From NCBI GenBank assembly GCA_965637545.1, contig OZ281497.1, positions 22,134,001 to 22,198,000 on the forward strand: 64,000 bases of DNA. The letters are read 5' to 3'. The stretch's first letter is position 1. The number at the start of each line of letters is the position of its first letter. The DNA is from Phallusia mammillata (taxonomy: Eukaryota). Of the stretch, positions 18,955 through 44,554 are shown in pieces. The position numbers and the translations under genes are program-made. The notes under the pieces were generated by a model. It was not told the origin of the DNA. It saw only the letters and a program-made list of their open reading frames with translations, and did no database searches.

Positions 18955-19724
18955 ATGGAGTACTCGTCTAAAGATATTTCTATGTGGTGCAATGTAGGAA
19001 CTCTTTTAATTACTCTTATCCAGTTGTTTTGCTGCACATGTTCATGTGGTAGTGATAAGTAAGTTTGTGTAACATTTGGCAACAAATTTTTGCTGTACTT
19101 GTGTCATTACTGTTGTGTGCGTTTTTTATGAAGATTTGGCTAAGTGGGAAAAGTGACAACGATCGCTGGCTTCTAATGTTCGTGAGCTCAGTTGCCAGAT
19201 GTTTGCAATTTGTTTGCTTTGTGGTGAACTTTACTTCTGCTTCACATTACATAAAAATTGCTGTGAATGTTGGAACTGGCTTTGTGCCGTTTTTAGGAGG
19301 TAGGTCTACATTATAATACACATGGTATTGAGTTTGACCACAGAAAAACTACGAGGAGAATTGCCATAAAATCTAGCGTTAGTCCAGATTGTAAGGATGG
19401 CCACATACAGGTCACTTTGCCATAGCTTTATTACATGGCTTTAGTAAATGTGAAGGCACTAATGTGTAAATGTATACTACGCGTAGAATGTTTGTAACCC
19501 ATTAAATGTTACAACAGTCACAACTACAAAACATATCCTGTGAAGTATGTATAACTGATACTCATAAAACACGTTTATAATACATACTTATATTATTAAC
19601 AGGTTTTTCTACGTGTTGTATTTTGGGTAACGAAACAAAAAGTGTGGGTGGACTATTGCTGAAGTCGTTTTTTCTTTCATTTTTTGTGCAACTTATTTGT
19701 TTATGCAAAAGCAATTTTGTTTAA
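18955..19724 (+). CDS. Small hydrophobic Cys-rich protein, paralog A (~126 aa; possibly impaired)
   Basis: Exons 18955-19058, 19145-19299 and 19603-19724: MEYSSKDISMWCNVGTLLITLIQLFCCTC... / ...RCLQFVCFVVNF...GTGFVPFLG / GFSTCC...LLLKSFFL. The canonical exon 2 acceptor seen in paralog D is deleted, and an in-frame AG at 19143-19144 is inferred as the replacement. Confidence 0.55.
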
Positions 19725-21054
19725 ATCTTTTTTATCTGTTGATGCCTTTCATAGCCAAAAAATAAAGTGTTAATTTAAGTTCTACCGTCTACTTTTGTTG
19801 GTATTGTTGGTTCATCTGCAATTTTTACAAAATAAAATGAATGCTGGTTAGTCCAATAAATATTAGGTCGTTATTGTTGTAACAGGAGGTCTCGTTTAGT
19901 TAAAAAGCATACAGCTCACTTTTAACCAACATATTTTAATTCCAACAATTGATGATTTCTAATATTATTTTTCGTACTTAAAATGGGATGCGGTGACATT
20001 ACAAGCACGCTTTGGGATTTTTTTTGTTACACCCAAAAACAGTTGTTTCAGAAAAACTTCATGCAACCATTACACCCTTACTGACCTTATATGGCTGTTA
20101 ACTTTAATTATACGTTCTTCGGAAAAACAAGAAATCAACACTCAACAACTTGATAAGCAAAAAGGGGCGGTACAGGAAAAATGTTGATAACACTGGCTTA
20201 AAAGAAGATAAAAACTGCTTAGTAGAGGAGATATTCACGCGTTGCGATAGTGACTATAGTCAGATATTATAATATCTTCATTCATCAACTAAACATTGTT
20301 TTGCGCAATGCAAGTGGCTTTTTGTTGCACATTTTCGCAAATTAACGTTATTGACAAAAATAAGGCCAGAGCTTACGAAAATGGGCCTTAAGTATGTTTT
20401 ACTGTTTTGTTCAGCAGTAACTTTACCCGGGATAAATTCACAGCAAATCTCAACGTACAAAAGCATTAACGAACGGTGTTTTGATGGAAACTACCTGGTG
20501 TTGTCAAGTCGGAGATGATTAGGGAGAAATTCTATTGCGTCATGTGCCCACAAGCTCCTTTGTTATCTGCTTCGCGTTGGGGGTTAACAAAGCGAACGCG
20601 CTTTTGGTTGTGCTTTGGCAACAGTCAGTAGAAAGGTAATTTAAAGCTGTCGCTGTTCATAATTGGCATTCGGAAAACGGAGTAAGACTTAAAACTATCC
20701 GAGACAGAAAAACAAAACCTAATGTTGATGCCATGTATAGTTTATGGCAAAATTGATATAACCAAGAATTTGTTTTAAGATATAAACAGAGTGATTTAAA
20801 CGAAATGTAAATTACAGCTGTGATATGCCCAATGTTTATTTATATTTACTTTAAATTTGTTATGTATAGACGCAAAAAAGTATTGTTTAGATCAATAAAT
20901 TCAAAGGACTGCGCGTTAACTATGTGTTAACGTGCTAGACAGCATAAATTGTGTAGTCATTTGAGCTGCTTTAAAATGCTTGTTTAAAGGTTAATATGAC
21001 AAAAATTATAAATCTTTCTTATATTAATTATATGTTTTCTTCGAAGAAACTATC

Positions 21055-21969
21055 ATGGTTGACTCATTTAAGTTCGATCAAACTGTTTTTGATTACCACA
21101 TTTGGTTAAATGTCGGAACTCTTGTGATTGCTGTGATCCAGTTTTACAGTACAATATACAAATACAGTTGGGGTGAAAAAAAGTCGGAGTAAGTTTGTGC
21201 ATAATTTGGTAACAAACATTTCTGCCTTTTTGTGTCGATTTTAGATGTTGTTACTTGTTGGTGTTTTTTTTTTGTACAGCGACCGTGACTGCATTTGGTG
21301 GTCTCGAGTGGTCCTGAGCTCAGTTGTCCGATTTATGCAACTAGTTTGCTTTCGGGTGAACTTGTCATCGTCTTCACACGACAATTTATTAGCCTGGAAT
21401 TTTGGAACTAGTTTCTTACTGTTTGTGGAAGGTAGGTCTACATAAGTTTGTATTTATTTTCATTTAATTCAGCTGGTTGGGTCATAATTAAAATTGACAT
21501 GATAATATGTTTCGTGAGTGAGCTCGAACAAAGAAAAACTAAATAGGAGGACTGCCATAAATTGTGCACATAAAGTTCACTTTTATACTTTTATTTACTT
21601 TCATAGTTTTATTAGAATGTGAAGGCGCAAATGTGATTTAGTGTAAAGGAGAGACTATCTGCCAACCAAACGTCACGACGACCATACGTAAACAAAACAC
21701 TATTAGGCATAATCACAACAACAACAAACTATATCCTGTGAAATGTGTAACTGTTATTCTTGAGACAAGTTCAATAAAAAAGTTTTTGCTGCCAGGCTTA
21801 AAATACAATTGCCAGAAGAGCCCTATAGAGTTAGTAAAACAAGTCCATGACAGGTTTCTTTACGTGTTGTATTACGGAAAACAAAGCGGAAAGCGTTTGT
21901 GGACTATTGCTGAAGTCGTTTTTTCTTCCAATGTTGGATTCTCTCTTTGAGTATGGAGCTTGTTCATAG
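21055..21969 (+). CDS. Small hydrophobic protein, paralog B (133 aa)
   Basis: Exons 21055-21188, 21280-21431 and 21854-21969; GT-AG introns of phase 2 and 1; open frame. MVDSFKFDQTVFDYHIWLNVGTLVIAVIQFY...WWSRVVLSSVVRFMQLVCFRVNL...NFGTSFLLFVEGFFTCC...LLLKSFFLPMLDSLFEYGACS*. Confidence 0.75.
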
Positions 21970-22289
21970 CTAAGAAAGTAACAATCCTTTTTTGGAGAAA
22001 TTTGCTTTTTTGTGTGACTTTTTTGTTGTGGAAAACCGATTTTGTGAAAAGCTTTTATTCTGTTGTTGTCTTTATAGCTGACAAATACACTGTGCATAAC
22101 ACTGATCAGCAACAATTTTGGGTGGATTCTGGTGACATTCCACTGATTGCACTCAATTTAGGCGTGATGATTTCAAACAATGTAGCCTGATTTTTTGTAT
22201 TAGGTCTAGTTCACTGGTGTTGTTTGTGTAGCTGCAATTGTAAAGCATTTTAATAAAACGATAGCTGGTAGTTCAAATAATTTTAAATT

Positions 22290-24869
22290 GGCTAACAATG
22301 CGTTTGAAAGAGAGAATCAGTTTTACCTTGAACAACGTCATGTTTCGTTGCTCTTAAGGCAACTGGTATATTGGTCTCAGACTTTCTGGGTAAATGTATA
22401 CTGCCCAGGAACGAAGGGCTGTTTCTGTTGTTTTTCGTACATCATCGGATATAAAAAAGCCACAAGTTGGTGTTTGCAAAATATCAATCCTTGTATTAAC
22501 TTACAGCAACAGTGTGTTTTTAGCTTTTCGTCAATTTTAGTTTTTTTTGCGTTTAATAAATCAACAAGTTTTGCTTTTAAACATAGAGTTTGGTGGGGTG
22601 TAACATAAGTTTTAAAGACTCTTTAACAAGTGATCGAAAAGGCCTCATAGAGGTTCGGTTACAAGACCCTAAACTAAAAATGCTATTGATTGCAGCTTTT
22701 CGTAAGAACTGCACCCATACAGAACTTTAGGGGTCGTTTGCACAAACGAAAAAATATACAAAAGTTGACATTTAAAAAAACACTAATGAAACATTGCTTG
22801 GCGAGGCTACTACAAACCCGTTAGCAATGAGGATCGCAATTGATTCAGTTGCTTTAGTAAAATAAATGTAAAAACAAGTTTTGCAAAACGTTTTGCTTGT
22901 ACCTCTATGCTTCATAAGAAATTTGTCTAAATAAATCGACTAAACAGACATTGTTTTGCATAATGATGTGTTTGTAGGCTATTGGACACTAATTACAGTC
23001 GTCGTCAACATTTACCACCCTGTCAACAAATAACGGATTTTACATGTAAAACAACATACAACACTGTGCAAAAACCCTGTATTTCTCTTCAGTTTACATA
23101 AGAGTGTATAGTCATTACAAAAACGGCCCTAAAATTTGTCTACTAAGGCATAACGATACAAATCACTGTGGTATTTGCCAGTATTTCGGAAAAGTGAGGA
23201 AAATGTTTCGTCGACGGAAAATCTCGTTGTGTCGGAACTAGGTTTGAACGGCAATCGTTTGTAAGAAAAAAGGTAATACAGGGTATTGCGTCATTTGCCT
23301 TAAGCACCTTACTGTGCGTCAAAAGTTTAAACGTGCCTTTCATTTTATGCTTTCGGTCTTAAAATTGACAAACCTTTAACTTCAGAACTGGTTGTTAAGC
23401 TGACTAAATTAAGACACACAAAGACCATGGCAGAAGCGTATGCTAACAATGGTTACCACAACTTGTTACTGTGTATTTTCCAAAATAATAATGTAAGATT
23501 TATTCAAGTTACTGAAGGCAAACAAAAAAGGGTACGTTGAACTTGAGATCAAACTGTATAACCCCTTGACATTACAAAAAAATCAAACAGTTTTTTAGGT
23601 AAATCACCTGGTGCAGCTAAGTTAGGGATTTTCGTGGAAAATTCTATTTGCGTCATGTGGTTACACTCGAACCCGTTATGCATTGTGCACTGATGGAGAA
23701 CAAAAGCGAACGGGTTTGGACTTCTAACAGTAAAACCTGAACATCTAGTGCAACGGCTATTGGTGGTTAGACTGTGTTTAGTTTGGCTCTATTTGAAAGT
23801 TGGGCAGTATTTTTTGAGTGAAATGACTATCCTTAGTGCATTTTCCTGATATTATGTAAGGAAAATGTCAAGTAACGAAAGGCCCAGTCTATTCTGGTTG
23901 ACTGAATAGTTAGCTACGAGTGTTTTCACCATATTTTACGCTGCCTAAACAGAAAAAAACTTCTTGTTGAGATTGTATTGTTGCTGATATGTCAACATGC
24001 AACAGTTGGTTTTAAGGAGCATTTAAACAAATAATAGTTGCTTGGTGTCGCTATAGGTTTCGATAGCATGCCAGTGTAGATCAGATAAGTTTTAGGGGTA
24101 AAATTATATATTCAAAAAAGGTTGGGCACCTCTGGTGTACACTATGAAAACAAACAAAACACAATAAAATTAAATAAAAAGCTATGATCCAGCAGGAAAA
24201 GTAAATACATCTGGTATTGTCAATTTGGGAATTTCAAAAAGAAATGCTATTTTTATATGGGTTCTTTGTTATCTGCTTCGTGTCCATGGTTAACAAAGCA
24301 AGCGCTCTTTTAGCTGTGCGATGACAATTATCAGTTGAAAAGCTATGTAATTCAATTCAATTCAGTTCAATTTATTTTTGCTTTGTAAGACTGTCACTGT
24401 CCCAGTTGGCAGCAGAAAAGCAGACTTAATTTTGCAACTATTCGAGACATTTGCACCAGAAACAATAAAAAAAGAACACTAATGTTCTTTGAAGTTTTAT
24501 CAGTTTATTTATGTCTCTGTCAAAAATATTGTAAAATAACAATGGGAAGGCTGGTTCTGATCTAATCATGCTATGAGCTGTGTTGAAAATGTCACGTGTT
24601 TATTCGTACTCAAAATGTCTGGTTAAAGGTTACGGTAAAAAAAACACCTATCTTCCTCAAAGAAACATAATGGAGTACTCTTATAAAGATATTTCAATTT
24701 GGTGCAATGTTGGAACTCTTTTAATTACTCTTATCCAGTTGTTTTGTTGCACATGTTCAAGTCGTAGTGATAAAGAAAAAAAATCGAAGTAAGTTTGTGT
24801 AACATTTGGTAACAAATTTTTGCTGCACTCGCGTCCTTACTGTTGTGTGTCTTTTTATGAAGATTTGGT
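22290..24869. repeat. Segmental duplication module Z plus promoter and exon 1, copy 1 (copy 2 ~35040-37984; diverged partial copy ~41640-43430)
   Basis: Collinear matches such as ttttaccttgaacaacgtcatgtttc (22320/35070) and gtcaacaaataacgg (23020/35860/42485). The empty site of the 36348 MITE is at 23556-23563. Confidence 0.9.
24669..24869 (+). pseudogene. Paralog C, truncated: exon 1 only
   Basis: Exon 1 (MEYSYKDISIWCNVGTLLITLIQLFCCTCSSRSDKEKKS) and its GTAAGT donor are intact. The sequence breaks inside intron 1 at ~24869 and joins module Y; exons 2-3 are absent. Confidence 0.85.
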
Positions 24870-24876
24870 ATGAAGG

Positions 24877-26449
24877 CAGTTTAAACGCCAAAACACGTTC
24901 GAAATGTGTCAAGGTCCCGCAAATCCACATATGGAATTAGAGCCTAAAGATTCGGTTTAAGAGAGTAAGACTGTGTAACACAAAGCCTTTTAGTTATTTT
25001 TTTCAAAGGTTTAAGAATGAAGTATCTTTAAAGCACTTGTTAAAACGGTTTAACTTAGGCCTACCATACGTCCTCTTTTTGGAGGACATGTCCTCTTTTT
25101 AACAAAAAAACAAGTTGTCCTCCGAAGACAAGAAAAAGTGCCCAAATGTCCTACTTTTTAAAGAATTTCTGTATTACCGAATACAAAAGTAACAATCATG
25201 CCTTTGGAAACAGCCAAATGTACATCTTCAGCTGATTTTTTTAAATACAGGTGGATTTTGCATATTTTGAGAATAAAAACTTTATTCAAACTATAATTTA
25301 ATATCATCTAATTTCTAAAGCTTTTATTTTTGGTGGGCCTTGAAGTATGTTTTCATGTCCTATTTAACAATGTGTCCTCCATTTGGGGGATGGAAATATG
25401 GTAGGCCTAGTTTAACTGCACCATCGTAAAACATGGAGTTAAAACCATAGTTAAACTGGGGCATTGGATTAATTGCTGTAATTCAGGTTTTCGGTACATC
25501 GTTCTTTTGTGATCAAGAACCACAGAAGGTTTTTGCAAATTTTTACAAACAATCTGTGTGCAGTTTTCGTTATCAAGGTTGCTTTGCCGGGTACAGTTAT
25601 AAGTTTTTTTTAATGTTGTGCAGTTGTTCCACATGTTGAGTAAACTCTCAAAAGTCCACACACATTCATGTAAAGCATTTGAATTTTAGAACTGGAATTT
25701 GTGGAGGGTAACTTTTTATTTTTCTTATTTATGTTTGGGTGAAATGGGTTAAAGTATATAGCTATGAATTTTACAAGACTTTTTTAATGTAGTTCAACTG
25801 TTTACTTTGCATTCAGGTATCATACTATTTTGTTCTGGAATGGAATGTGAAAATTTGTTACTTGCAAAGGTGATAATTCTTCCAATATTGCATGCTATCT
25901 TCCAATATAATGCAATGTGAGATTAAAACAAAATGTTTAAAATCGGGTAGGCACTTGCACTGAATTTTTATTCTTGCGTTTGTGCAGCCATAATCTTTTA
26001 ACCGTCAGGTCGTAATTTCTTTCTTATTTGTTGGAATTTATGTGGCTTAACAAGCAAGATACTTTAATTTGTCTATGATGAATAAATACAGTTTTGTGGA
26101 AGATAACGCATGTTCCTGCATTGTGGTTCGAAACCAAACTAATGATAAAGGATCACATCGAGTGTCTGTTTACGCATTTATTCTGCCATAAGGGTCAGCG
26201 TTTTTTTAATGTGTGTGGGTCCAATGACCAGGCGTATTTAGCAATCGTTCTGTGTTTACTATATTGGAATTCTATTTTGAAGCAACAGCCTAAAGTGACA
26301 TTGCTACGTGTCAAAGCCTACACATTTGAGGTGAACCAACGGATTTAAACAGACAGTAGTTGACACGCTTATACAAACTTATAATGAGAACAGTGCATGT
26401 AGGACTGTAACTGTATATTGGTTACGTAAGCAACAAAATATTAATACAC
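24877..26449. repeat. Segmental duplication module Y, copy 1 (copy 2 at 40113-41404; older partial copies ~31190-31390 and ~34160-34660)
   Basis: Collinear from cagtttaaacgccaaaacacg to aatattaatacacc. Paired shadow ORFs 26094-26348 and 41034-41252. Confidence 0.92.
25056..25409. mobile_element. hAT-type MITE, 354 bp
   Basis: 13-bp TIR taggcctaccata; 8-bp TSD gtttaact; empty site in the paralogous copy at 40287-40294. Confidence 0.93.
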
Positions 26450-27280
26450 CCAATTGTAAGGTTTATGTTTTTTGCACTACCTTGAAAGTTTGGTAAAGTA
26501 TCTTATGTAACAGGAGTCTTGGGTTGCGTTATTAAAGCAGAGATTCTGTTACATGAGGCAGGGGCTCTTGGACAATGCAAAGCTTATAAAAGTGAAAGAA
26601 AAGTATGACAGAAAACTTTTAAAAAGAGAGGTATATTCGTAATAAATAGAGGTATACTAATAAGGTTAACATTTACTGAGCAAAACATTTGTATTTGTAG
26701 AACACTATGTTGCTGCAAGATGGCATTTTCATGCCCAAAAAGCAAACAATATTGGGACTTAATGTGAATTATGAGGGCAGCTCTGTAAGTTATATAGAAG
26801 GCTTGTTTGGTTTGTTTTTTGGGATTTAGCCTTGTTGTATATATATAAGCTGGAGTGCACATAGCACCTATTCCCAACTAGTAAAATATCAAAGGTAATC
26901 AGATTTAGCCCATACAATTAGTTTTGATTAAGTGCAGTAGGAATTTTACTTAACATACATACCAGTAGGAATTTTACTTAACAGACATACCATAATATTT
27001 AAACATTTATGATTTAAACACATATTGCAAATATCTAGGTAAATTAGTTTGTATTTTGTAGAATGATCAGGCTGCAACATTACAGAAAATTAGGAATTGG
27101 CTTAGAAACGAAAGTGTCAGCTCTTGTTTGCTGAAGTTTCCATCACTACATGAGGAAAAAATGGTGAGCAGAATTAGTACTCAAACCAGAAAAGCATTTC
27201 ATATTTGGGTCTCTGGTGTAATTACAAGTTGCATCAAACTTAAACAGTTGCATCAATGACATAAGTTTGTACCAAACATG

Positions 27281-27321
<41 letters not shown>

Positions 27322-28792: not shown

Positions 28793-30426
28793 TAATTAGC
28801 CATCGTAATAACCCAGTAAATTTATATTGAAAAAAATTGAAAAGGTTTAACTTTTAATAATGTTCTAACCTGTTTGTATTCCACCAACAAAGAAAAGTAA
28901 CATCGCAAAGTAAATTCGAGTCAACTCATTTTTAAACAAGTACACCTGTCCTACAAAACTCGTAGCTTTTCACACAAAATTACAGACCGTCGCTCCCAAC
29001 GGAACGTTTAGATAGTAGAACCGACAAGAATCAACTACCGGAAAGTTTCTTTATTCACATGTACCGAACAGCGCTTACCACAAGTGAAAGAGTTCTGTGA
29101 ATTTGGAAACGCTTGTTTTCCCAACGCCTCTTAGACCTTTGTAAAAGGGTGTCACAAGGTAATTTTATCTTTCGCCGGAACACGCAGCACAATAAATCTG
29201 CTCCTCGTGACGAAACCTGAGTTGTATAGACTGAGAACATTTATTTTACTCCAGTATATTCCGTAAATTACTTCCCTGGAAAAAACTTTATGTATAATCA
29301 TTATGTTACTTGTGATAAAATAAACGCGCATAACCAAGCGCTGAAAATTTATGTACAGTGTAATTTTAACATAATATACAATTATACAGTATCATAATGC
29401 GACATTATACATATAATCGTAGACTCATAAACTCTTGTATGAGATATTTCTAAGTGAAACAACAACTGTGGTTTTGTCGGTCTCTCGAAACTCCAAGCGG
29501 AGAATTGAAAGTGACGAACACCGAAAATCGGCAATACAGGTTGATATGCACGTAAAAAATACGTTGTGCTAATACTATACGATTAAAAAGTTGATGTGAT
29601 GACTACAAAAACAGCCTTAAATTTGCCCTAAACAGGACATAAAGAACATTAAAGGCTTACGCGGGAAGTACCGCAGTCTCTCGGGAGAATAAAACTTGTT
29701 TCGCTGAGAAGAAATCCCCTTTTACCAGTGCTAGGTTTTCAATGGCAATACCTACGTAGGAAAGAAAGGAAAAGGGCTTGTGTCGTTTGCCCCATTATGA
29801 GCCTTGCTTTTCGTCTTTAACCAACAGTTTAATCAAGCTTTTCAATAGCTGTATTCTAAACTTTTTTCATATATTTTCGGTTTTTAATTTGATTTAACGT
29901 AAAAACTCATTATTAACTTAATTATATTACACATAGATAGACTATAACAAAGCCACATTCTAACAACGGTTCCCACAATTTAGGCAAATTGTCCTCGTGC
30001 AAACGTTCAGTACAGTAACGTTGGCATTAGCGTCCAAATCTTACTCAAAAACTTTAATGTAGGTAAGATAAAGTAAGCAAAATTATCGGAAAAAGGCAAA
30101 CCCCTGAGATCGGGCAAAACGGTCTAAAACAAAGAAAACACAGTAACAGCTATGATCCAGCATGAAAGGTAAATGTATTTGGTATTGTTAAGTCGGGAAC
30201 TTCAAAAAGAAATAATATTGTTAAATTTTTTTGTTATTTGCTTCGAGACCAGAAACGAATTATCGTTCGAAACACAAATGCATATACGAAGCGAACGCTC
30301 TTTTAGAAGATTTGGTTAACCCATGGTTAACAAAGCGAACGCTCTTTTAGCTGTGCGATGACAACTGTCAGCTGGAAAGGTGTCAACCGTCGCTGTTCCC
30401 AGTTGGCAGCAGGAAAGCAGACTTAA
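28793..30426. repeat. Segmental duplication module X, copy 2
   Basis: Matches 17025-18690. It then jumps to a copy of 20278-20970 (30430-31158). Confidence 0.95.
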
Positions 30427-31671
30427 AATCATTTATCAACTAAACAATGTTTTGCGCAATGCAAGTGGCTTTTTGTTGCACATTTTTGCAAATTAATGTC
30501 ATTGACAAAAATAAGGCCAGAGTTTACGAAAATGGGCCTTAAGTATGTTTTACTGTTTTGTTCAGCAGTTACTTTACCCGGGATTTAAACATGAGTAAAA
30601 CAATTCACAGCACATCTCAACCTACAAAGGCATTAGCGAACGGTGTTTTGATGGAAAGTACGTTGTCAAGTCGGGGATGATTAGGGGAAAATTGTATTGC
30701 GTCATGTGACCACAAGCTTCTTTGTTATCTGCTTCGCGTTGGTGGTTAACAAAGCGAACGTGCTTTTGGTTGTGCTTTGGCAACAGTCAGTAGAAAGGTA
30801 CTTTAAAGCTGTCGCCGTTCATAATTCGTATTCGAAAATTTGAGCTAAGCTTTAAACTATCCGAGACCAAAAAAATCTAATGCTGATGCAGTGTATAAAG
30901 CATGACAAAATTGATATTAACAAGAATTTGTATTAAGATTTTGTATAAGATACAGATCAAATTTTGTATAAGATACAGATCAAACGTTCTGTAAGTTACA
31001 GCTGTTTTGTCCCTAATGTTGGTTATGCATTTGACGCAAATTGTGAAGTCAGTATTGGGAAGGATGATTTTGTTTCGATTGATAAACTCAATAGACTGCG
31101 TGTTGAATGTGTGTGAACGTGTTTGACAGCATAATTTGAGTAGTCATATGAACTGCTTATTCATGCGTTTGTGTAGCCATGTTTTTATACCATCAGGCTG
31201 TAATTTTTTTCCCAGTTTGTTCGAACTTATGTGACTGACCAAGCAAGATACTTTGCCCCACGAATAAATAAAGTTTTATAGAAGGTAACGCATGTTCCTG
31301 TAATGCTGTTTGAAGCAAGAGTAATGGTAAAAGAGTTCAACAACTTAGAGAGTCTGTTTACGCAATTTTTCTGCCATAAAAGTCAAAACAGTTTTTAAAC
31401 GATATTTTATATTGTGTATTTTCGAAAAGGAAATATTCAAAACAAAAGAAATGTTGACCTAATCATTTAAATTTTAGTTTTTACTCAAGTTAACAATAGC
31501 AAACAAAATATACTACTTTTTTGGAATATTGTTGTTCCGGAAAAACAATTACTTGCTTAACACTGCAGTTTAGCATTTGCTTTAATCCTTTTTGTTTAGG
31601 TGTAGATATAAATTTCTTTTAAAAACGTTGGTAGTTTTTGTTTGTTTTATCATTATCAACATCATACAGTC

Positions 31672-32201
31672 ATGACTTGGCCCACAATTGGAATCATAAT
31701 AACTGCTTCGATTCCGTTTTTGCTTACATTACGCAAACATTTTGATTGTGACAATAACAACAAGTGAGTTAGTGATACATTTAGTAACAAACCGTTTTGC
31801 TTAATTCGTGTTTTTTTAAATTAACTATGTGTTACTGTCTGCACAGATGTTGCAACATTGGTTGTATCCTCCAACTGGTTGTCAGCTTGTTGGCAGGATT
31901 GTTTTCATGTTGTTGCTGTATTGTCAACCTTCAAGCAAACACAAAGAACGAAATTGTTCTGTTCCATGAGGGAATTGGTTTAGTTCAGTTTGTTGCAGGT
32001 GCGTACACTTCGTAGTTTAACATTTTTAACTGAAGGAGAAAGGGTAAACAAAGGTGAAGCACAATATAACTTACTGATGTAAAGTGTGTGCCTTTTGTTA
32101 GTGGGTTTGTTGTATGTTTGAAATTAAAGTTTTTCCTTTTTGCATCAACAGGTAACCCCAGTATGCCGATTAGTCATACGACATGCATGTTTTTTTATTA
32201 A
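31672..32201 (+). CDS. Small hydrophobic Cys-rich protein, paralog E (second subfamily, ~97 aa)
   Basis: Exons 31672-31763, 31847-31998 and 32152-32201, with the same intron phases (2, 1) as A/B/D. MTWPTIGIIITASIPFLL...KCCNIGCILQLVVSLLAGLFSCCCCIVNL...GIGLVQFVAG. Exon 3 is short and less certain. Confidence 0.7.
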
Positions 32202-32377
32202 CATTCAAAAATTTAGTCTTTAGTCAAAAATTTAAAAATTTAGTAAAATTCAAAATTTATTCGTTCAGAAATTAGCCAATTACGTAGTTTTGGATAAAAA
32301 AGCTGTTTACTTATGCCAAGTTCAAGAGATTAGTTGTCTAAAATACTCATTACAAACAAATTCATGATTGTTTACAG

Positions 32378-33853
32378 CAGGGGCGGGCAACTTCTCCAGT
32401 CGGCGGGCCTGATATGGGAAAATGAAGTACTTGGCGGGCCGGATTCCTGAATCGATACATTAATCGCGTATTTATCCAGTGATAAAACGGATTTTTGACG
32501 ACCTAAACCAGTGGTTCTTAACCTTTTTATAACGGCCGAACCCCTACTATATTCTTCAGCCTTTGGTCGAACCCCAAGTTACATCCTAGGTTTTTAACCC
32601 ATTTTGTTTGGTGGGTCATAATTAGTTTTTGTTTAAACGTAGTGGCAACAGTTACTGTTTGTCATTTTGTTAAATTCTGACATCATAATACAAGCAACTT
32701 GTTTCAGGATTGCTTTAATTCCGGCAACTTTTAGTTTTTACCAAAATGAAGCATTGTATTTTTAGCATCTGTACACTAACATGAAAAAGATGAAGTAATA
32801 AGTTTTTGCTGCCAACAAAATTTCGTTGTTTTTCTGCTTACGAACAACGCGAACAATGCTCTTTGTTACGTCAAAAAAAGAAAAGAAAACCTTAGTGCAG
32901 GGTTGCACAACGTCGCAGAATCTTCTTTTACCAACGGCCGCCATTTGCCTGCTTATTTTTGTTTTAAAATATTTGGTTTATATCATGCATTTACCATCTA
33001 ATAGCGCCCAAAAAGCCCAGATTAATTTCTAGCTCGGTGCATAGATTGAGCTGCACAGCGAGGAGATCAGTCTTAAGTGTTTATGATGTCACAATCTATA
33101 TTGTGATGCTTGTTGTACCTGTTTTGTTCGCATTGTTGTCACACAATAGGCGTACAAAAAGTCTGACACATATGGTTATTAGGCTGGTAATACTCTTTTT
33201 AGTACCACAAAAACTGTTTAGAGCAGTTTAAAACACCCCTGCCTAAGTTTAACCTTCCAGTGTTTCGATATTAAGCAAATACAAATTGCCGTTTTTAGCG
33301 ACTATAGACCCTAAAGTTTGACAAAAACGAGTATTTGTATTGTACTTCAAAAAGACCTTCGTCGAACCCCTGATTCGGCGTTGCCGAACCCCTGGGGTTC
33401 GATCGATCACCGGTTAAGAACCACTGACCTAAACCAAATACAATCAAGAACGTCACAATTACAATACAGTCCAAACAATCTAACTGATATAACATAAAAT
33501 TATTCACCACAGCAAATTTAATGCATAAACCACAAACTTAGATACTGCTGAAACACTAACTAGGCTACACGTGTGGAAACAAAGGAAACCGTGGCCACAC
33601 ACATGGTTGGCAGTTATGTCGTAACAATGGATGTATGGTGCAATGGTAACAACGGCGGGATAGTTTTTTTGCTATTGGGGAGCGTTACTGTCCGTTACAA
33701 CTATAATTTGACGTAGTAAGCAAGTAGTGGGGGATTGTAGCAGACTGTGGCCGCGGGCCACATTATCATGTAAGACCAGAAACTGTCCGCGGGCCGCTCA
33801 AAATTCCGTCGCGGGCCGGATCCGGCCCGCGGGCCGTATGTTGCCCGCCCCTG
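32378..33853. mobile_element. Non-autonomous hAT element, outer element of a nest
   Basis: Perfect 14-bp TIR caggggcgggcaac; perfect TSD gtttacag. Confidence 0.95.
32509..33426. mobile_element. Non-autonomous hAT element nested inside 32378-33853
   Basis: Perfect 15-bp TIR cagtggttcttaacc; perfect TSD acctaaac. Confidence 0.95.
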
Positions 33854-35352
33854 GTTTACAGGCATTATCTCCGTTTGCGTCGATTGGGCAAGTAACAAGG
33901 AAAATATTGAAGGCGAAGGAGCCCTTAAAGCGTTTTGGTTACCACTTTTCCACTGTTTTTGCCAATATAAGATAATTTGAAGACAATTTAAACTAATACG
34001 GTTACAGTTTAATATTTGCATTAAATATTTTTTCTTTTGCTGTGCCGCTGTGTTTTGTTTAAAATTGATGCTTCCAACTTTTCCGCTTTCCGTGTTTTTT
34101 AATCGTAATGCCTTTTTTGCTGTTTATGTCCCGCTTTTCTATTTTTTTGAAATGTTATGGGGCCAAATGGCCAAGCGTTTTCAGCAATCGTTCTGTGTTT
34201 ACTATGCCATGGGTTGTTACACTTTTTGATGCCATTGCATTTCTCGAAGCAGCAACCTAAAGTGGTATTGCTACGTGTCAAAACGTACAAATCAAAATTG
34301 ATCTATCAGATTTCCAGAAAGACAGTAGCTGCCCAACTTATCCAAACTTATACTGGGCACAGTGTATTTAGAACAGTAACTGCGTAAATTGGTTACATAA
34401 GCAAAGAAATATTAAAAAAGCTACACCGCAGTATCCTACTCAGTTTTAAAGCATAGGGATAACTAAAATATGCTTGAAGTCAGACCAACCACCATTCCTT
34501 ACTTGCCTGTGGTAGTTAGGCTTAAATGATAATTCCATAAACAAACAAGAGATTTAAACAATACAAAAAATCATTGCATTGAGAAGAGTTTCCCACATTT
34601 TTAATTTGCTCGTGCAGAAATGGATCTTATCTGGTTGTTTTCAGGGTAACGATAATAAAAAGGTTAATAACCACTAACTGAACAGTCGCACAATCTCACG
34701 ATAAATGTAATTGTAAAGGCACAAGGTCTTATAGGTCCCACTTCTAAAAGCTTCTAAAAGACCGCGGACAACTAGTTTCTGAGCAGTTAGTTTAAAGCGC
34801 TTAACATATATTTTTTTCATGGTTTTTTTATTTTCTTTTTGGGCAAAGGGTTTTCAAAAATTCAAAACTAACCTTATTCTGTCTAAAAGCCAAGCGATGA
34901 AGCGACAAAAGTGCATTAAATCTAAACCTTAAGGTCTGACCCTGTAGAAAACCAAAATATATTTTGCGAAAACTCCATGACCTTATTACCTCAGAGAAAA
35001 ATGATTTACGCTGCTTCATAATTTGCTTCGCGTTCATGGCTATAACAAAGCGTTTATAAGAGAGAGTCGGTTTTACCTTCAACAACGTCATGTTTCATTG
35101 CTCGTAAGGCAACTGAAATTGGTCTCCGACTTTATTGCTAAATGTATACTACCCAGTAACTAAGGGCTGTTTTTTCTGTTGCTTTTCGTACATCATCGGA
35201 AATAAAAAGGCCACAAGTTGGTACTGTATTTGCAAAATATCAACCCGTATTACTGCAATAGTGTTTTTTTAGCTTTGCGTCAATTTTCGTTTTTTTTGCG
35301 GCTCATAAAACAAAATGTTTTGATTTTAAACATAGAGTTTGGTGGAGTGTAA

Positions 35353-35513
35353 CAAAAGTTTTGGTATGGCACTTTAGGAGATTTACCAAAACTGGTGGAA
35401 AATTTTGCTGTTCTCAGAAAATTGCATCAATCAATGTGTTGGTGGGGGCCCCACAGTAAATAGCTTGGCGGGCCGGACTGTGGCCCTCGGGCCGTATGTT
35501 GCACACCCCTGCC
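35353..35513. mobile_element. One-ended hAT fragment
   Basis: Ends in gttgcacacccctg. It replaces ~50 bp present in the paralogous copy (~22612-22665). No left TIR; boundaries approximate. Confidence 0.6.
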
Positions 35514-36347: not shown

Positions 36348-36687
36348 CAGGGGTGTCCAAAGTGCGGCCCGCGGGCCAAATGCGGCCCCCGGCGACATTT
36401 CACGTGGCCCGCAGGTGTTTTTCAAAATGTTTCGCAAAAACGTTTTTGGGTTTTTGCGACTTGCGACTTCACGCAAACGCCTTCCATGGAACTTTATTTA
36501 CCGGTAAAAGCAAAGTGTACAGCGTGCTGACGCAACAAAATCCCACAATTTCCTTAAATTCCGTATATTTTTGCTCAATTTTCAAAAAACGTTGGCCCGC
36601 GGGCGTCTTCTTCTGGCAAAAATTGGCCCGCGGGCGTCATCATCTGGCAAAAATTGGCCCCCACGAAAAAAAGTTTGGACACCCCTG
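36348..36687. mobile_element. hAT-type MITE, 340 bp
   Basis: TIR caggggtgtccaaa; TSD gtataagc; empty paralogous site gtataacc at 23556. Confidence 0.95.
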
Positions 36688-37785: not shown

Positions 37786-38987
37786 ATGGAGTACTCGTCT
37801 AAAGATATTTCAATTCGGTGCAATGTTGGAACTCTTATAATTACTCTTATCCAGTTGTTTTGTTGCACATGTTCATGTGGTAGTGATAAAGAAAAAAAAT
37901 CAAAGTAAGTTTGTGTAACATTTGGTAACAAATTTTTGCTGCACTCGCGTCCTTACTGTTGTGTGTCTTTTTATGAAGATTTGGTTAAGTGGTGGTCTTA
38001 TTTTCTGTACAGGGAAAGTGACAACGATTGGTGGCTTATGTTCGTGAGCTCAGTTGCCCGATGTTTGCAATTTGTTTGCTTTGTGGTGAACTTTACTTCT
38101 GCTTCCTATTATATAAAAGTTGCTATGAATGCTGGAACTGGTTTAGTACTGTTTGTGGAAGGTAGGTCTGCTTATTTTTAAACTTTAGTTTGATTAAACT
38201 GCTTGAGCCATATTTCATTTTGTACACTATTTAAGTTTGGCGATTGAGCTTGACCGAAGAAAAACTACAGTAGGGATTACCATAAAATATGTGTTTTTTG
38301 ATGGCCACCACTTTTGTAAAGCCGCGAATGTGATTTAGCGAAAACTGGTTCTTTGATCAGACTAAGCCTAATGACCATTGTACAAAAACGCTATAGACAA
38401 AACAACAAACCATATCCCATGCAGAACAGAGTTGTAAGTCGGGCCGGGCATTTCGAGTCGGGTTCGGGTTCGGGACGAGTTTGGGGCGAGTTCGGACCGG
38501 GTTCGGGCTGGGTTCGGGCTTTGGTTTTTCTATTATTCGTCCTTAATTCGGGCTTGACTTCACTTTCTGTGTCGGTATGTTTTTAATGTAAATTACCAAG
38601 CTAATAAGTAGCTAGTTACTAGGCGTAACCTAATGCCCAACAGCCCTAAAACGTCTTGTTTAAGCCATTGTACTACCATTGTGTATGTCTTCTTTATTAT
38701 AAGCTTGTCAATCAAACATTCAGGCCAAAACGGGCTTTACCAAAACGATTCGGGTTCCGGCCTGGCTCGGGCCGGGCTCGGGCTTAAATTTCGGGGCCCG
38801 CTTACAACTCTGATGCAGTATGTACAATTGCCATTTGTAAAACAAGTTTGTGTTGTGTGCAGGTTGCGTCAAATGTCGCTGCGAGTTGGAATGGAAATGG
38901 GATGTTGTCTTGCTTCTGAAGTCGTTTACTCTCCCAATTTTAGATATTTATTTTGAGTATAAAGTTTGTTCATTGGAAACACAGTAA
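37786..38987 (+). CDS. Small hydrophobic Cys-rich protein, paralog D (130 aa)
   Basis: Exons 37786-37904, 38013-38161 and 38863-38987; canonical splice sites; open frame. MEYSSKDISIRCNVGTLIITLIQLFCCTCSCGSDKEKKSKESDNDWWLMFVSSVARCLQFVCFVVNFTSASYYIKVAMNAGTGLVLFVEGCVKCRCELEWKWDVVLLLKSFTLPILDIYFEYKVCSLETQ*. Confidence 0.78.
38427..38812. mobile_element. hAT-type MITE in intron 2 of paralog D
   Basis: 12-bp TIR cagagttgtaag; TSD atgcagaa/atgcagta; internal CGGGC-rich subterminal motifs (a related fragment lies at ~13350-13605). Confidence 0.9.
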
Positions 38988-41746
38988 CAATCCATCATTT
39001 TTCGAAATGCCTTCTTTGTCCAACTGTTGTTAAAAGAAATACTTTGTACAAACTCCTTTTTCTGTTGTTATTTTAGGCAGGTGGCCTTCTATAGAAAAAA
39101 ATTGTGGAAACACTGTATAGTGCTTTAAATAGTGATCAATGAAATTTCAGTGTGCCGAAACGTTTTGACTGAATATGGCGTTTTGCAAATGCTTCGGTTC
39201 CAATCCGAACTTTAAAAATTCGGCCGAAACCGAACTTTTTAAATGTATGTAATTGATGCCCAAACTTTCAATATCGCCAATTTAAAACATTTTTTAATTA
39301 ACTCATTGTTGTATCTACAAAGATGGAGCGACGTTGTCTGCAAAATTATCTGCGTTTTTGTCCAGTTGTTTTTATGTTGTTGTAACAGTTGTTATGGAGT
39401 GCCATAAACGAGTTCATCAACGGGTTTAGTTAAGAACATCCACCGAAAAGGGAATTTTAGGTTAGACCTGATTTGGTGGCACTTTTTTTCGACTCTACAG
39501 TTTTGGCCCGAACCGTTTTAAGCCGGGTTTGATGCACCATTAGTTTTAAGGTTTTTTGGTTTTTAAAACGCCAATTTTAATCTTATATTCATATGGGGTG
39601 GCAGTTAATTTGATGTATTCGAAAATTAGTCGGTCTCATTCAGTTTAAATGGCCAAGTCCCTTTTCATAAACGTAATACCTAATTCGGCAATATCGGACA
39701 TAAGCCCGAATGGCACTTCAACTTTATCCTTAAGGTTTAATTCAAGCGAGAACCAAAAATAATGATTTTGGCGGAAAACCTCCACGATAATTCTATTTGT
39801 GTCATGTGGTTACGCCTCAATCTTCATTATGTGTGTTTTGCGTGCATGCATGACAAAGCGAACGAGTCTACACTTCTAAACGACTATAACGACTAACATT
39901 CAGTGTAAAGTTGTGCTGTGGTTAGTAAGTGGTCGAAATCTAAGTAAGAATCGTTTAAACTGTAAAGGTGTTTTCACAGTTGCTTTTAAGGCAATTGGTG
40001 ATGTTCTGTCGGACAATCTGTTAAGTGTATTGCGAAAGGCCGAACAAATTTGATTGACAGATTAGCCAGACATAAAAGAAGTAACTTGATTGGCAGAAAA
40101 ACGTATAACAACCAGTTTAAACGCCAAAACACGTTCGAAATTTGTCAAGGTCCCGCAAATCCACATATGAAATTAGAGCCTAAAGATTCGGTTTAGGAGA
40201 GTAAGACTGTGTAAAACATAGCCTTTTAGTTATTTTTTTTTTCAAAGGTTTAAGAATGAAGTATCTTTAAAGCACTTGTTAAATCGGTTTGACTGCACCA
40301 TCGTAAAACATGGAGTTAAAACCATGGTTTAACTGGGGCATTGGATTAATTGCTGTAATTCAGGTTTTCGGTACATCGTTCTTTTGTGATCAAAAACCAG
40401 AGTAAGTTTTTTGCAATTTTTTACACACAATCTGTGTGCAGTTTTCATTATCAAGGTTGCGTTGCCGGGTACAGTTATAAGTTGTTGTTTTTTTAATGTT
40501 GTGCAGTTGTTCCACACCAGCTTGGCGATTTCGAATGTTTGTCTGCATTTTAGCTGGATTGGCTTCATGTTGTTGCTGTTGAGTAAACTCTCAAAAGTCC
40601 ACACACATTCATGCAAAGCATTTGAATTTTGGAACTGGAATTTGTGGAGGGTAACTTTTTATTCTTATTATTTATGTTTGGGTGAAGTGGGTTAAAGTAT
40701 ATAGCTATGAATTTTACAAGATTTTTTTTAATGTAGTTAAACTGTTCACTTTGCATTCAGGTATCATACTATTTTGTTCTGGAATGGAATGTGAAAATTT
40801 GTTACTTGCAAAGGTGATAATTCTTCCAATGTTGCATGCTATCTTCCAATATAATGCAATGTGAGATTAAAACTATTAAAAACCTAATTAGGCACTTGCA
40901 CTGAATTTTTATTCTTGCGTTTGTGCAGCCATAATCTTTTAACCGTCAGGTCGTAATTTCTTCCTTATTTTGTTGGAATTTATGTGGCTTAACAAGCAAG
41001 ATACTTTTGTCTATGATGAATAAATAAAGTTTTGTGGAAGATAACGCATGTTCCTGCCTGTGGTTCGAAACCAAACTAATGATAAAGGATCACATCGAGT
41101 GTCTGTTTACGCATTTATTCTGCCATAAGGGTCAGCGTTTTTTTAATGTGTGTGGGTCCAATGACCAGGCGTATTTAGCAATCGTTCTGTATTTACTATA
41201 TTGTAATTCTATTTTGAAGCCTTGCGTTTCTCTAAGCAACAGCCTAAAGTGACATTGCTACGTGTCAAAGCCTACAAATTTGAAGTGAACCAACGGATTT
41301 AAACAGACAGTAGTTGACCCACTTATACAAACTTATAATGAGAACAGTGCATGTAGGACTGTAACTGTACATTGGTTACATAAGCAACAAAATATTAATA
41401 CACCGCAGTATCCTAGCTATACCGCAGTATCCTATTCAGTTTTAAAGCATGTAGATAAATCAAATAGTATGTTTGAAGCCAGACTAACTACCATTCCTTA
41501 CTTGCCTGTGGTAGTGAGGTTTAAATGATAATAATTCGTTAAACAAACAAGATATTTCAACAATACCAAAAATAAATCATTTCATTCAGAAGAGTTTCTG
41601 AAATTTTTAATCTGCTCGTGCATAAATGACAATTATCTCGTTGTTTACTGAATTTTTTTATATAACTTTGCGTCAATTTTCGTTTTTTGCGCTTTATAAA
41701 ACAATATATTTTGCCTTTCAACAAATGGAGTTCGCTGTGGTCTAAG

Positions 41747-42264
41747 CAGGGAGTCGAACCGGAACTGAACCCGAACCCGCGAACCGGTTTGAGCGGTTAA
41801 TTTCATTAAACCCGAACCGCTAATTATGATTTTCTAAAAACCCGAAACGGAGTTGAACCCGATATTTTGTTTGGCGTTGGACCCAAACCGGAACCGGAAC
41901 CGAACCAGTAAACAATGCAGTCTGTTTTATATTTTGTGATTTTTTTTTCAGAACAGCGCACTGAAGAATACACGAGATAACGCTTATAGGGCGTGTCAAA
42001 ACTAACAGTGCACGGGCAAAATTCTTTTGGATATTGATAAGGCCAGGTAGATGATGGGTAGAATTAAATTAAAACGAATACAATTTTAAACCGGTTTGAA
42101 AACCGCAAACCGGTTCGGACCGGATAATTTACCCAAACCGGAACAAAACCCGAACCCGAAAATATACATTTTTAAAAACCTGAACCGAACCCGAATCCTT
42201 AAAAACAAAACCAAGGGAACCCAAACCGAACCTGAACCCATATGATAAGCGGTTCGACTCCGTG
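41747..42264. mobile_element. hAT-type MITE, 518 bp
   Basis: TIR cagggagtcgaacc with 1 mismatch; TSD ggtctaag; many aacccg/aaccg subterminal motifs. Confidence 0.93.
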
Positions 42265-43886
42265 GGTCTAAGAGAAGTTTTAGAGATTCTTTAACTAGTG
42301 ATGATCGAAAAGGTTTATGACCTCATAGACGTTCGGTTACAAGACCCCAGACGAAAAATGCTTTAGGTTGCACATGCAAGAGATATTATGTTCAACCAGT
42401 ATCGTTAGATAACTGGGTATAGAGCTACTAACACCATACTTGACAGACCAACATTTAGCTAATTTTCGATAGGTTTGTCACCCTGTCAACAAATACCGGG
42501 TTTAACATGTAAACCAACAAAACAGCGTGCAAAAACCCTGTATTTCTCTTAAGTTTGTATAAGGATGCAGTCATTAAAAAACGGCTTTACAAATATCGTA
42601 CCAAGAAGAAACGCTGAAGCCAGTGTGGTCAATGCCAGTATTTCAGGAGAGTGAAAACTGTCTCGTCGATGGGAAATCCCCTTGTGTCGGAGGTAAGTTT
42701 TCTACGGCAAAAATACGTTTAAGGAAAAAGGTAATGTTGAGTAAAGCATCATGTGCCTTGTGTGCTTTGCTTCGCGCTTTTGACCAACAGATTAAAAAGG
42801 TGCATTGCTTGAGTTACATTAGAAAATTTAAGCTTATGTTTTCGGTCTTTTGATAAACCTTTAACTTTAGAACTAATATTGGGCTAATTTAAATTATACG
42901 ATAAAAGAGCAGTATACTAACAGTGGTTTCACACCTTCCCTATCATTAGGCGTTGTTGTCCTCGTGCAAATGTTTAGGACAGTTTGGCATTAGTTGCCAA
43001 TATTTACGCAAAGAAAACTATTTCTTTTGTTGTCTTTTTACATAAGCATGTTGGAACAGTTTTGCAAGCATATATGCTACTGTGTATTTCCAAAAAGTAA
43101 TCAAAACAAAATAAATGTTGACCTAACCATTTAAAGTTTAGTTTTTACACAAGTTAACAAAGGCAAACATAATAGACTACATTGAACTTCAGCCCAAACC
43201 GTAAAAGCCCTTTTTTGCTACAAGGGGAAATCGTTTTCGTGGAAATCACCAGGTGCAGCTTATTTAGGTGTCCCAGAGAGAGAGATGATGAGAGATGAGT
43301 TTATTTCGCTCGGTGAACATAGCGACACAATAGCACCAAAACAATCACCAAGCCGGAAATAGCTCTAGAGGCAGTCCATGTGCGTCATGTGGTTAAACCC
43401 TAATCTTTTTTGTTATGTGTTTCGCCCTGATGGATAACATAGCGAACGACTTTACACTTCTAGCAGTAATACAGCTAACAGCTGCACGCAAAAGCACAGG
43501 TATGCTTGTGCTTGGTCCGTCTTGCCAATTTGAAAGTGGAGATTTCGCATTTGTTTTAATGTGCAAATGCAGCAATGACTTTCAGTGCTTTGGTCTCAGA
43601 TTGTTGTTTTAGATTTGGTCGAAGATGAACTATGCTTTGAAATTATGTCAGTCAGACACAATCAGCTGTTAAAATGCCCAAGTCTAACTTTTTAGTGCAA
43701 GGATTCCTATTTATACCGGACATTTTAACCTAAATAAACGCAGGGATTCTAACAGCTAAGAATATAACTGTAATATGCATGGTCCTTAAAACTATTCAAA
43801 CCTTTTGATCTAGGTTAAAACATAAATTTATTTTAATAAACGTTGCTGAGTTTGGTTTGTTTCATCATTATTATCATAGTGCAATC

Positions 43887-44426
43887 ATGACTTGGCCCAC
43901 AATTGGAATTATAACAACTGCTTCAATCCAGTTTTTGTGTGCATTGTTCAATTGTGATTGTGACAATGACAAAGAGTAAGTTTGTGCAATTTGTGTCTGC
44001 GCAACGGTTTTACTTTTACCAGCAGGTTTAATTATGTTGTTGTCTGCACAGATGTTGCAACTTTGCGTGGTTCTTACAATTGTTTGTCAGCGTGTTGGCA
44101 GGATGGGGTTCATGCTTTTGCTGTTTTGCCAACCTTCAATCAAACACAAAGGACGACGTATTTCTTATCCATTTTGGAATTGGTTTTGGTCAGTTTTTTG
44201 CAGGTGCTTATATTTCGTATTTTGTTCAGGTAAACAGTTAGGAGTAAAGGTAAAAATAACAACTTTGTTTAAGCCACAACGACGTTAATTACAAATGTGG
44301 GGTTTGTACGTGGTTGACCAGGCAAAGCACGCGGTGTTAATTGTCTTTCTAGAAATGTGCCAAACAAGATTGTTTATCTCTGCATCGACAGCGTACACAA
44401 GCACGCACATTATTTATGCCCCCTAA
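43887..44426 (+). CDS. Small hydrophobic Cys-rich protein, paralog F (closest to E)
   Basis: Exons 43887-43975, 44052-44203 and 44392-44426 (an in-frame alternative acceptor exists at 44353). MTWPTIGIITTASIQFLCALFNCDCDNDKECCNFAWFLQLFVSVLAGWGSCFCCFANL...GIGFGQFFA. Confidence 0.7.
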
Positions 44427-44554
44427 ATGACGTTTTCTTAAAATGTGAAACTCGTATCATTTGTAATTACTTATTTAAACCTAATCTTTAACCAGTTGTT
44501 TACCGCGCATTTCCAAATGACGAAGTTGTAGATAAGTCTAAATAGGCTATAGTA

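What the first reader, a model, noticed from the sequence alone, without database searches (positions are those of the whole stretch)
18955..44426. Unrecognised family of small Cys-rich multi-pass membrane proteins in a birth-and-death cluster (six loci)
Seen: loci at 18955 (A), 21055 (B), 24669 (C, truncated), 31672 (E), 37786 (D) and 43887 (F), all on the plus strand. They share exon structure (phase 2 then phase 1 introns; exon 2 of 149-155 nt) and motifs: W-x-(N/T)-(V/I)-G-(T/I) in helix 1, a Cys cluster and charged loop, C-(F/I)-x-x-N, and G-x-G-x-x-x-F-(V/F)-x-G at the end of exon 2. A, B and D also share LLLKSF. D has four hydrophobic stretches (~9-29, 46-67, 73-90, 103-120); E and F have three. 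None appears whole in the ORF track. I recognise no family. Inference: lineage-specific 3-4 TM proteins, possibly palmitoylated at the juxtamembrane Cys, under rapid turnover.
Basis: partly seen in the sequence, partly recalled or inferred. Interest (0 to 1): 0.8.

Follow-up and report, generated by a model that had tools for sequence, protein, structure and literature searches.

The report
Orphan small membrane-protein gene cluster
A tandem cluster of five intact and three decayed three-exon genes encodes 119-133-residue, cysteine-rich, multi-pass membrane proteins that match no known family; sequence evolution says the genes are real, but I found no transcript and no relative outside this window.

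Summary
The plus strand between 18,955 and 45,757 carries one three-exon gene family. Introns are in phase 2 then 1, and all 15 exons of the intact copies have a length of 2 mod 3.

Corrections:
- E and F also have the family's third exon (33862-33980 and 45639-45757).
- C starts at 24670.
- Two further loci exist: G (40310-40864, in-frame TGA) and its decayed copy G' (25433-25920).

The two subfamilies (A/B/D and E/F) are homologous: 30-34 bits against at most 22 in 5,000 shuffles.

Evidence for coding:
- Open frames survive 20-49% nucleotide divergence (chance 0.002-0.025).
- All exon length changes keep the frame.
- A-D dN/dS is 0.30.
- E/F exons are 81% identical against 59% for flanking DNA.

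Exon-by-exon searches (Pfam, PDB, 1.84 billion proteins, metagenome and viral contigs) found nothing, but short queries give these searches little power. Contigs of four runs guessed to be RNA cover no coding exon.

Function is inferred only: a small, probably S-acylated, oligomeric membrane protein. The spliced proteins were not searched or folded, by rule. The scan noted part of this same stretch once before (s1-399254), and nothing like it on other DNA.

The parts
18955..19724 (+). Gene A, intact, 126 aa. Exons 18955-19058, 19145-19299, 19603-19724. It is a chimera: the 5' part is D-like and exon 3 is B-like.
   Evidence: Model and translation. 18587-19307 is 80% identical to 37396-38169, and 19599-19679 is 83% identical to 21850-21930.
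21055..21969 (+). Gene B, intact, 133 aa. Exons 21055-21188, 21280-21431, 21854-21969. It has only 6 Cys and no Cys cluster after helix 1.
24670..24788 (+). Locus C. Exon 1 only (119 nt, donor intact), 96% identical to D. The copy lost the equivalent of 37986-40112 in a roughly 2.1-kb deletion, so exons 2 and 3 are gone.
25433..25920 (+). Locus G', a decayed duplicate of G. It has a TAG in exon 1, a lost intron-1 donor, a 60-nt loss in exon 2, and the same TGA as G.
31672..33980 (+). Gene E, intact, 120 aa. Exons 31672-31763, 31847-31998, 33862-33980. Intron 2 holds an insert of about 1.5 kb bounded by inverted repeats at 32373-32391 and 33840-33858, which ends 3 nt before the acceptor.
37786..38987 (+). 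Gene D, intact, 130 aa. Exons 37786-37904, 38013-38161, 38863-38987. Intron 2 holds a MITE-like element with inverted arms at 38427-38453 and 38786-38812.
40310..40864 (+). Locus G, a pseudogene that is intermediate between the A/B/D and E/F types. Exon 1 is 40310-40401. Exon 2 starts at 40507 and has an in-frame TGA at 40580-40582. Its end is 8 nt short with the GTAACT donor; the frame is kept only by a weak alternative donor after 40643. Exon 3 is 40761-40864.
43887..45757 (+). Gene F, intact, 119 aa. Exons 43887-43975, 44052-44203, 45639-45757.
22293..26450 (.). Segmental duplicate of 35043-41404, which is the D-upstream region, D and G. Identity is 76-96%, and the copy has the internal deletion that truncates C.
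28796..31158 (.). A relic unit made of copies of the A-upstream flank (93% to 17016-18692) and the B-upstream flank (80% to 20278-20971) without the genes. It leads into E.
23666..24666 (.). A 1-kb block directly upstream of C that is held by contigs of four runs guessed to be RNA. The D-upstream paralogue (about 37366-37780) is held as well. The block stops at the AG that precedes the start codon.

Best explanation
The region holds a tandem, same-strand cluster of one taxonomically restricted three-exon gene family. Five copies are intact (A, B, D, E, F) and three are dead (C, G, G').

Each intact gene encodes a 119-133-residue polytopic membrane protein, laid out as follows:
- A very short N-terminus.
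- Helix 1, carrying W-x-(N/T)-(V/I)-G.
- A charged loop that is Cys-rich in four of the five.
- Helix 2, ending in C-x-x-x-N.
- A loop of about 8 residues.
- A Gly-rich helix 3 (G-x-(G/S) ... F-x-x-G).
- A Cys next to the membrane.
- A weakly hydrophobic tail, K-(S/A)-F-x-L-(P/S).

Shown here: the copies, their shared exon structure, their homology, conservation of the reading frame, and the duplications and decay.

Inferred from hydropathy and charge only: the N-terminus faces outside or the lumen, and loop 1 and the C-terminal tail face the cytosol. That would place most Cys clusters at the cytosolic membrane face, where S-acylation is possible.

Most likely mode of action (inference): a small proteolipid-like protein that works as an oligomer or as an accessory subunit in a membrane, and that evolves fast under weak purifying selection. 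The Y-tract plus AG found 2-8 nt before every intact start codon suggests that the mRNAs begin at a splice acceptor, either by spliced-leader trans-splicing or from a 5' non-coding exon.
For: - Exon structure: all 15 exons of the five intact genes are 2 mod 3 in length, although exon lengths differ (exon 1: 104, 134, 119, 92, 89; exon 2: 155, 152, 149, 152, 152; exon 3: 122, 116, 125, 119, 119). Intron lengths vary freely.
- Open frames: with the same number of random substitutions, a pair stays free of stop codons in only 0.2-2.5% of trials.
- Selection: A-D dN/dS over exons 1-2 is 0.30 (Fisher p 0.004), and comparisons between the subfamilies give 0.54-0.56 (p 0.02-0.03).
- E and F exons 1-2 are 81% identical, against 59% for the adjoining non-coding DNA (p 1.4e-8).
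- The dead copies show what decay looks like here: stop codons, frame loss and deletion.
- Homology of the two subfamilies. Locus G bridges them.
- Hydrophobic segments.
- Acceptor before the ATG. The habit is known in Ciona (PMC1488885).
Against: - No transcript evidence. Contigs of four runs guessed to be RNA cover no coding exon of A, B or C and show no joints. Ten more RNA-labelled runs of the species hold next to none of the stretch's sampled words.
- dN/dS is 0.5-0.9 and not significantly below 1 for most pairs, and 0.92 for E-F exons 1-2.
- No orthologue or relative was found anywhere.
- E carries a 1.5-kb insert that ends 3 nt before its last acceptor.
- Topology, acylation and oligomerisation are untested.
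Confidence: 0.6

Rival explanations
1. The loci descend from a family that was once functional but is now silent and decaying. The intact frames simply have not yet been hit.
For: - No RNA contig lies on any coding exon.
- Three of eight copies are already dead.
- dN/dS is 0.5-0.9 for most pairs.
- Transposon inserts sit in the introns of D and E.
Against: - Five frames stay open through 20-49% nucleotide divergence, where chance gives 0.2-2.5% per pair.
- Every exon length change is a multiple of 3.
- A-D dN/dS is 0.30, p 0.004.
- E/F exons are far better kept than their flanks.
- Contigs show presence, not absence, and the runs are small.
Confidence: 0.2
2. The proteins are very divergent members of a known family of small multi-pass membrane proteins (for example tetraspan proteolipids, the CD225 type or the Ctr type). 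The family was missed because only 30-51-residue exon pieces could be searched.
For: - Power is low. A 50-position profile needs about 45 bits in 1.84 billion proteins, yet even E against the full-length A/B/D profile reaches only 34 bits.
- The general build (about 125 aa, 3-4 hydrophobic segments, Cys next to the membrane) is common.
Against: - No Pfam family even at E 10 for any of 16 exon pieces.
- PDB profiles of all three exons gave only chance-level rows.
- The signature motifs of Ctr and SMR are absent.
Confidence: 0.12
3. The exons are kept for a reason other than the protein, such as an RNA-level or DNA-level function or gene conversion limited to exons. The open frames would then be incidental.
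For: In E-F exons 1-2, synonymous and non-synonymous sites are equally conserved (dN/dS 0.92), while both are far better kept than introns and flanks.
Against: - Frame-preserving indels and absence of stop codons across all five copies.
- A-D dN/dS of 0.30.
- No Rfam family in the window.
- The hydrophobic periodicity is that of membrane helices.
Confidence: 0.05

Closest known systems
IFITM / CD225 (dispanin) family
   Same: Proteins of about 130 residues with Cys clusters at the cytosolic end of a hydrophobic segment (S-acylated in IFITMs, from established knowledge). They are encoded by few-exon genes in tandem arrays that gain and lose copies quickly.
   Different: No CD225 match on any exon. 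This family has three to four hydrophobic segments rather than two, three exons, and different conserved motifs.
MS4A/CD20 and MARVEL-type (MAL, plasmolipin) tetraspan proteolipids
   Same: Small multi-pass membrane proteins with short loops, often in lineage-specific tandem clusters, that work as oligomers or accessory subunits.
   Different: Those proteins are longer (about 150-250 aa) and have four clear helices. No Pfam match was found here. The fourth segment here is only weakly hydrophobic in B, D, E and F.
Ctr copper transporters
   Same: The inferred layout: three helices, N-terminus outside, a charged cytosolic loop between helices 1 and 2, a very short loop between helices 2 and 3, a Gly-rich helix 3 and a Cys-bearing cytosolic tail.
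   Different: There is no M-x3-M in helix 2, and G-x3-G in helix 3 occurs only in F. No sequence match was found. This is a resemblance of layout only.
SMR transporters (EmrE)
   Same: About 110-130 residues with four hydrophobic segments. The exon 1 profile touches EmrE helix 3 (residues 60-73).
   Different: The E-values are 1.9-5.6, which is chance level. The match pairs helix 1 here with helix 3 there, and helix 1 has no membrane-embedded Glu.

Membership tests
CD225 / IFITM (dispanin) | Match to the Pfam CD225 model | tested here: not met
   No family at E up to 10 for any of 16 exon pieces. Caveat: pieces of 29-51 residues, not the joined protein.
CD225 / IFITM (dispanin) | Two hydrophobic domains flanking a conserved intracellular loop | tested here: not met
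   Hydropathy shows two strong, one moderate and one weak segment in every intact copy.
Ctr copper transporter | M-x3-M in the second helix | tested here: not met
   Helix 2 has no such motif in any copy. Its conserved residues are S52, C62 and N66.
Ctr copper transporter | G-x3-G in the third helix | tested here: not met
   The motif here is G-x-(G/S) followed six residues later by G. Glycines at i and i+4 occur only in F.
Ctr copper transporter | Three helices with N-terminus out and C-terminus in | tested here: inconclusive
   Hydropathy and charge distribution are compatible. No topology predictor or experiment was available.
SMR (EmrE) | Significant sequence similarity, and a conserved Glu in helix 1 | tested here: not met
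   PDB profile hits have E 1.9-5.6. Helix 1 of no copy has an acidic residue.
MARVEL / MS4A tetraspan proteolipids | Match to the family model over four helices | tested here: inconclusive
   No Pfam hit exon by exon. A four-helix model cannot be matched fairly by single exons, and the joined protein was not searched.
S-acylated (palmitoylated) membrane proteins | Cys at the cytosolic membrane interface that carries acyl chains | not testable with these tools
   Cys clusters follow helix 1 in A, D, E and F but not in B. At least one Cys lies within 6 residues after G90 in all five. The modification itself needs an experiment.

The most novel reading that the evidence does not exclude
The family is an expressed, sea-squirt-only invention whose subunits assemble, as Ctr trimers do, into a small pore or metal pathway lined with Cys residues. 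The invariant C62 and N66 at the outer end of helix 2 and the Gly face of helix 3 would line it, and the copies would diversify under positive selection (E-F dN about equal to dS while the exons stay conserved).
Probability: 0.05. Interest if true: 0.7.

Novelty: new variant of a known kind. Interest (0 to 1): 0.35.

Why it matters
If the genes are expressed, this is a clean small example of a taxonomically restricted membrane-protein family caught in the middle of birth and death. Intact, chimeric, truncated and nonsense copies lie side by side. That makes it useful for studying how orphan membrane proteins arise and diversify in tunicates, and it is a gap in gene catalogues, because no copy is visible as a plain open reading frame. 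By itself it does not answer a long-standing question. Orphan small-protein families are common in sea-squirt genomes, and function and expression are still open.

Tried and rejected
- Pfam on 16 exon pieces at E up to 10: nothing.
- Word search on the stop-free stretches around exon 2 of D and of E, so that full-length proteins fell within the length window: nothing.
- Exhaustive profile search with exon 2 of all five copies on 1.84 billion representatives: one hit, a 4762-residue bacterial repeat protein that matches 13 times through an A-x-N-A-G-T-G-like repeat. Rejected as spurious.
- PDB profiles of exons 1, 2 and 3: only chance-level rows, UHRF1 at E 0.5 and EmrE at E 1.9-5.6.
- Metagenome and viral contig scans with both subfamilies: nothing. 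The five-sequence alignment was too diverse to scan with.
- Control: the 336-residue 7TM-like ORF at 60749-61756(-) also finds nothing, not even itself. This genome's proteins are therefore not in the catalogue.
- AlphaFold on exon 2 alone: one long helix, pLDDT 68.6, uninformative. No fold search was made.
- Rfam and tRNA scans: none.
- Selenocysteine reading of the TGA in G: rejected. The paralogues have I, F or V there, not Cys, and G' has decayed further.
- Upstream in-frame extension of C: rejected, because it is not kept in D.
- One giant cassette gene, like the VWA array upstream: rejected, because each unit starts with ATG and ends in a stop codon.
- They were handled only inside local scripts, built from the window file.
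Full report
**What is there.** The window is AT-rich eukaryotic DNA (GC 0.33-0.39). Earlier notes of this scan take the genome for a sea squirt; I could not check that independently. A, C and D are 82-96% identical in DNA, B is 68-73% identical to A and D, and E and F are 75% identical.

I built gene models from the sequence. Every junction is GT-AG, most donors are GTAAGT or GTAGGT, and the introns are in phase 2 then phase 1.

**Corrections and additions.**
G (40310-40864) has all three exons, but with an in-frame TGA at 40580-40582 and a shortened end of exon 2. G' (25433-25920) is its duplicate, with a further stop codon, a lost donor and a 60-nt deletion.
- G is intermediate. Its exon 1 and exon 3 resemble B and D, and its exon 2 resembles E and F.
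- Using G's exon 3 as a guide, I found the true third exons of E (33862-33980) and F (45639-45757). They align with each other (E 2e-11 in DNA), follow good acceptors in phase 1, and carry the family tail K-A-F-x-L-P.
- The ATG of C is at 24670.
- The profile scan found no further copies anywhere in the 64 kb.

**Homology of the two subfamilies.** A/B/D proteins and E/F proteins share only 23-25% identity. Even so, a profile of A, B and D scores E at 33.8 bits and F at 29.8 bits, and the best of 5,000 global shuffles and 5,000 12-residue-block shuffles reaches 22.4 bits. Together with identical intron phases and the bridging locus G, they are one family. Twelve residues are invariant in the five intact proteins.

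**Are they genes?** Four lines of evidence say yes.
1. All 15 exons of the five intact copies have a length of 2 mod 3, although exon lengths differ between copies by 3 to 45 nt. Intron lengths vary freely: 76-108 nt for intron 1 and 303-1863 nt for intron 2.
2. When a coding sequence is given the same number of random substitutions that separates a pair (20-49% of sites), it stays free of stop codons in only 0.2-2.5% of trials.
3. dN/dS is 0.30 for A-D over exons 1-2 (Fisher p 0.004) and 0.54-0.56 between the subfamilies (p 0.02-0.03). Other pairs lie at 0.5-0.9 and are not significant.
4. E and F exons 1-2 are 81% identical while their upstream DNA and introns are 59% identical (p 1.4e-8).

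The dead copies C, G and G' show what unconstrained decay looks like in the same place.

**Against.** I found no transcript evidence. The only run search and the only read-laying run allowed went to 18800-24799, which covers A, B and the start of C. No listed holder is on record as RNA. Four runs guessed to be RNA gave contigs only on 23666-24666 and on a 28-nt spot in an intron of B, with no joints. Contigs show presence, not absence, and the runs are small, but this leaves expression open.

**An unexplained side result.** The 1-kb block upstream of C is held in all four runs. The variant letters in three of the contigs are exactly those of the paralogous block upstream of D. Both upstream blocks are therefore present, and they stop within a few bases of the AG that precedes the start codon.

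Every intact copy has a pyrimidine tract plus AG 2-8 nt before its ATG. In Ciona, about half of the genes are trans-spliced at such unpaired acceptors, and operons lack intercistronic DNA, so that an upstream mRNA ends at the acceptor of the next gene (PMC1488885).

The block could therefore be any of three things:
- the end of an upstream transcript;
- a non-coding RNA;
- accessible promoter DNA, if the runs are not RNA.

I could not decide among these.

**Turnover.** The region is a mosaic of duplicated segments.
- 22293-26450 is a copy of 35043-41404 (D-upstream, D and G) at 76-96% identity. It lacks the equivalent of 37986-40112, and this loss is what truncates C.
- A is a chimera. Its 5' part is D-like, and its exon 3 is 83% identical to B's but only about 57% identical to D's.
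- 28796-31158 copies the A and B upstream flanks without the genes.
- D and E carry inserts bounded by inverted repeats in intron 2.

'Birth and death' is a fair description.

**What the proteins look like.** This analysis was run only in local scripts on the joined models.
- Length is 119-133 residues. Cys content is 8.5-9.2% in A, D, E and F, and 4.5% in B.
- Segments 1 and 2 are strongly hydrophobic and segment 3 is moderately so. The C-terminal segment is weak in B, D, E and F and strong only in A.
- Loop 1 holds most of the Lys and Arg, and loop 2 is about 8 residues long.
- By the positive-inside rule, this suggests that the N-terminus is outside, and that loop 1 and the tail are cytosolic. 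That would put the Cys after helix 1 and after helix 3 at the cytosolic interface, where S-acylation is possible.

This topology is inference only. The N-x-(S/T) sequon after helix 2 is present only in A, B and D, and it lies too close to the membrane to count.

**Comparison with what is known.** The joined proteins were not searched or folded.
- Pfam gave nothing at E up to 10 for 16 exon pieces.
- PDB profiles of all three exons gave only chance-level rows.
- Two word searches gave nothing.
- The exhaustive profile search of 1.84 billion proteins gave one spurious bacterial repeat protein.
- Metagenome and viral contig scans gave nothing.

The weight of these blanks is limited for two reasons. 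A 336-residue ORF of the same window does not find even itself, so this genome is not in the catalogue. A 50-position profile also needs about 45 bits at that database size, more than E reaches against the full-length A/B/D profile.

The signature motifs of Ctr and SMR are absent, and the CD225, MS4A and MARVEL models do not match. The closest analogues are analogues of build and of cluster dynamics, not relatives.

**Verdict.** The most likely reading (0.6) is a real, fast-evolving family of small multi-pass membrane proteins restricted to a narrow lineage. The proteins are probably acylated and oligomeric, and their function is unknown. The main rival (0.2) is a silent, decaying family.

I score interest at 0.35. 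It is a solid unannotated family with a neat turnover history, but such orphans are frequent in these genomes, and neither expression nor function has been shown.

Noticed in passing
window 23666-24666 and about 37366-37780: Contigs of four runs guessed to be RNA tile the 1-kb blocks directly upstream of C and D and stop at the AG before the start codon. The blocks hold no ORF of 60 aa or more, no Rfam family and no poly(A) signal at either end.
   Followed up: partly
window 18947, 21046, 24662, 31669, 37778, 43879: Every family start codon except G's sits 2-8 nt behind a pyrimidine tract plus AG. This looks like a trans-splice or 5'-UTR acceptor. Other notes of the scan report the same habit elsewhere in this genome.
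   Followed up: partly
window 60746-61756 (-): A single-exon 336-residue ORF with a 7TM-like hydrophobic pattern. It has no Pfam hit and no hit in the protein catalogue, not even to itself.
   Followed up: partly
window 32373-33858: An insert of about 1.5 kb bounded by 19-nt inverted repeats (89% complementary) in intron 2 of E. It ends 3 nt before the acceptor's short pyrimidine stretch and may weaken splicing of E.
   Followed up: no
window 38427-38812: A MITE-like element of about 390 nt with 27-nt inverted arms and G/C-rich GGGC(T/C) repeats in intron 2 of D. Similar pieces lie at 13341-13580.
   Followed up: no
   Followed up: no
window 21800-21827: 31-letter contigs at depth up to 105 in run X1 match 28 nt inside intron 2 of B with one mismatch. 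They probably come from an abundant unrelated transcript or repeat.
   Followed up: no
window 31672-31998 vs 43887-44203: In E-F exons 1-2, synonymous sites are as conserved as non-synonymous ones (dN/dS 0.92), while both are much better kept than the introns. Exon 3 of the same pair is far more diverged (dS 0.99).
   Followed up: partly
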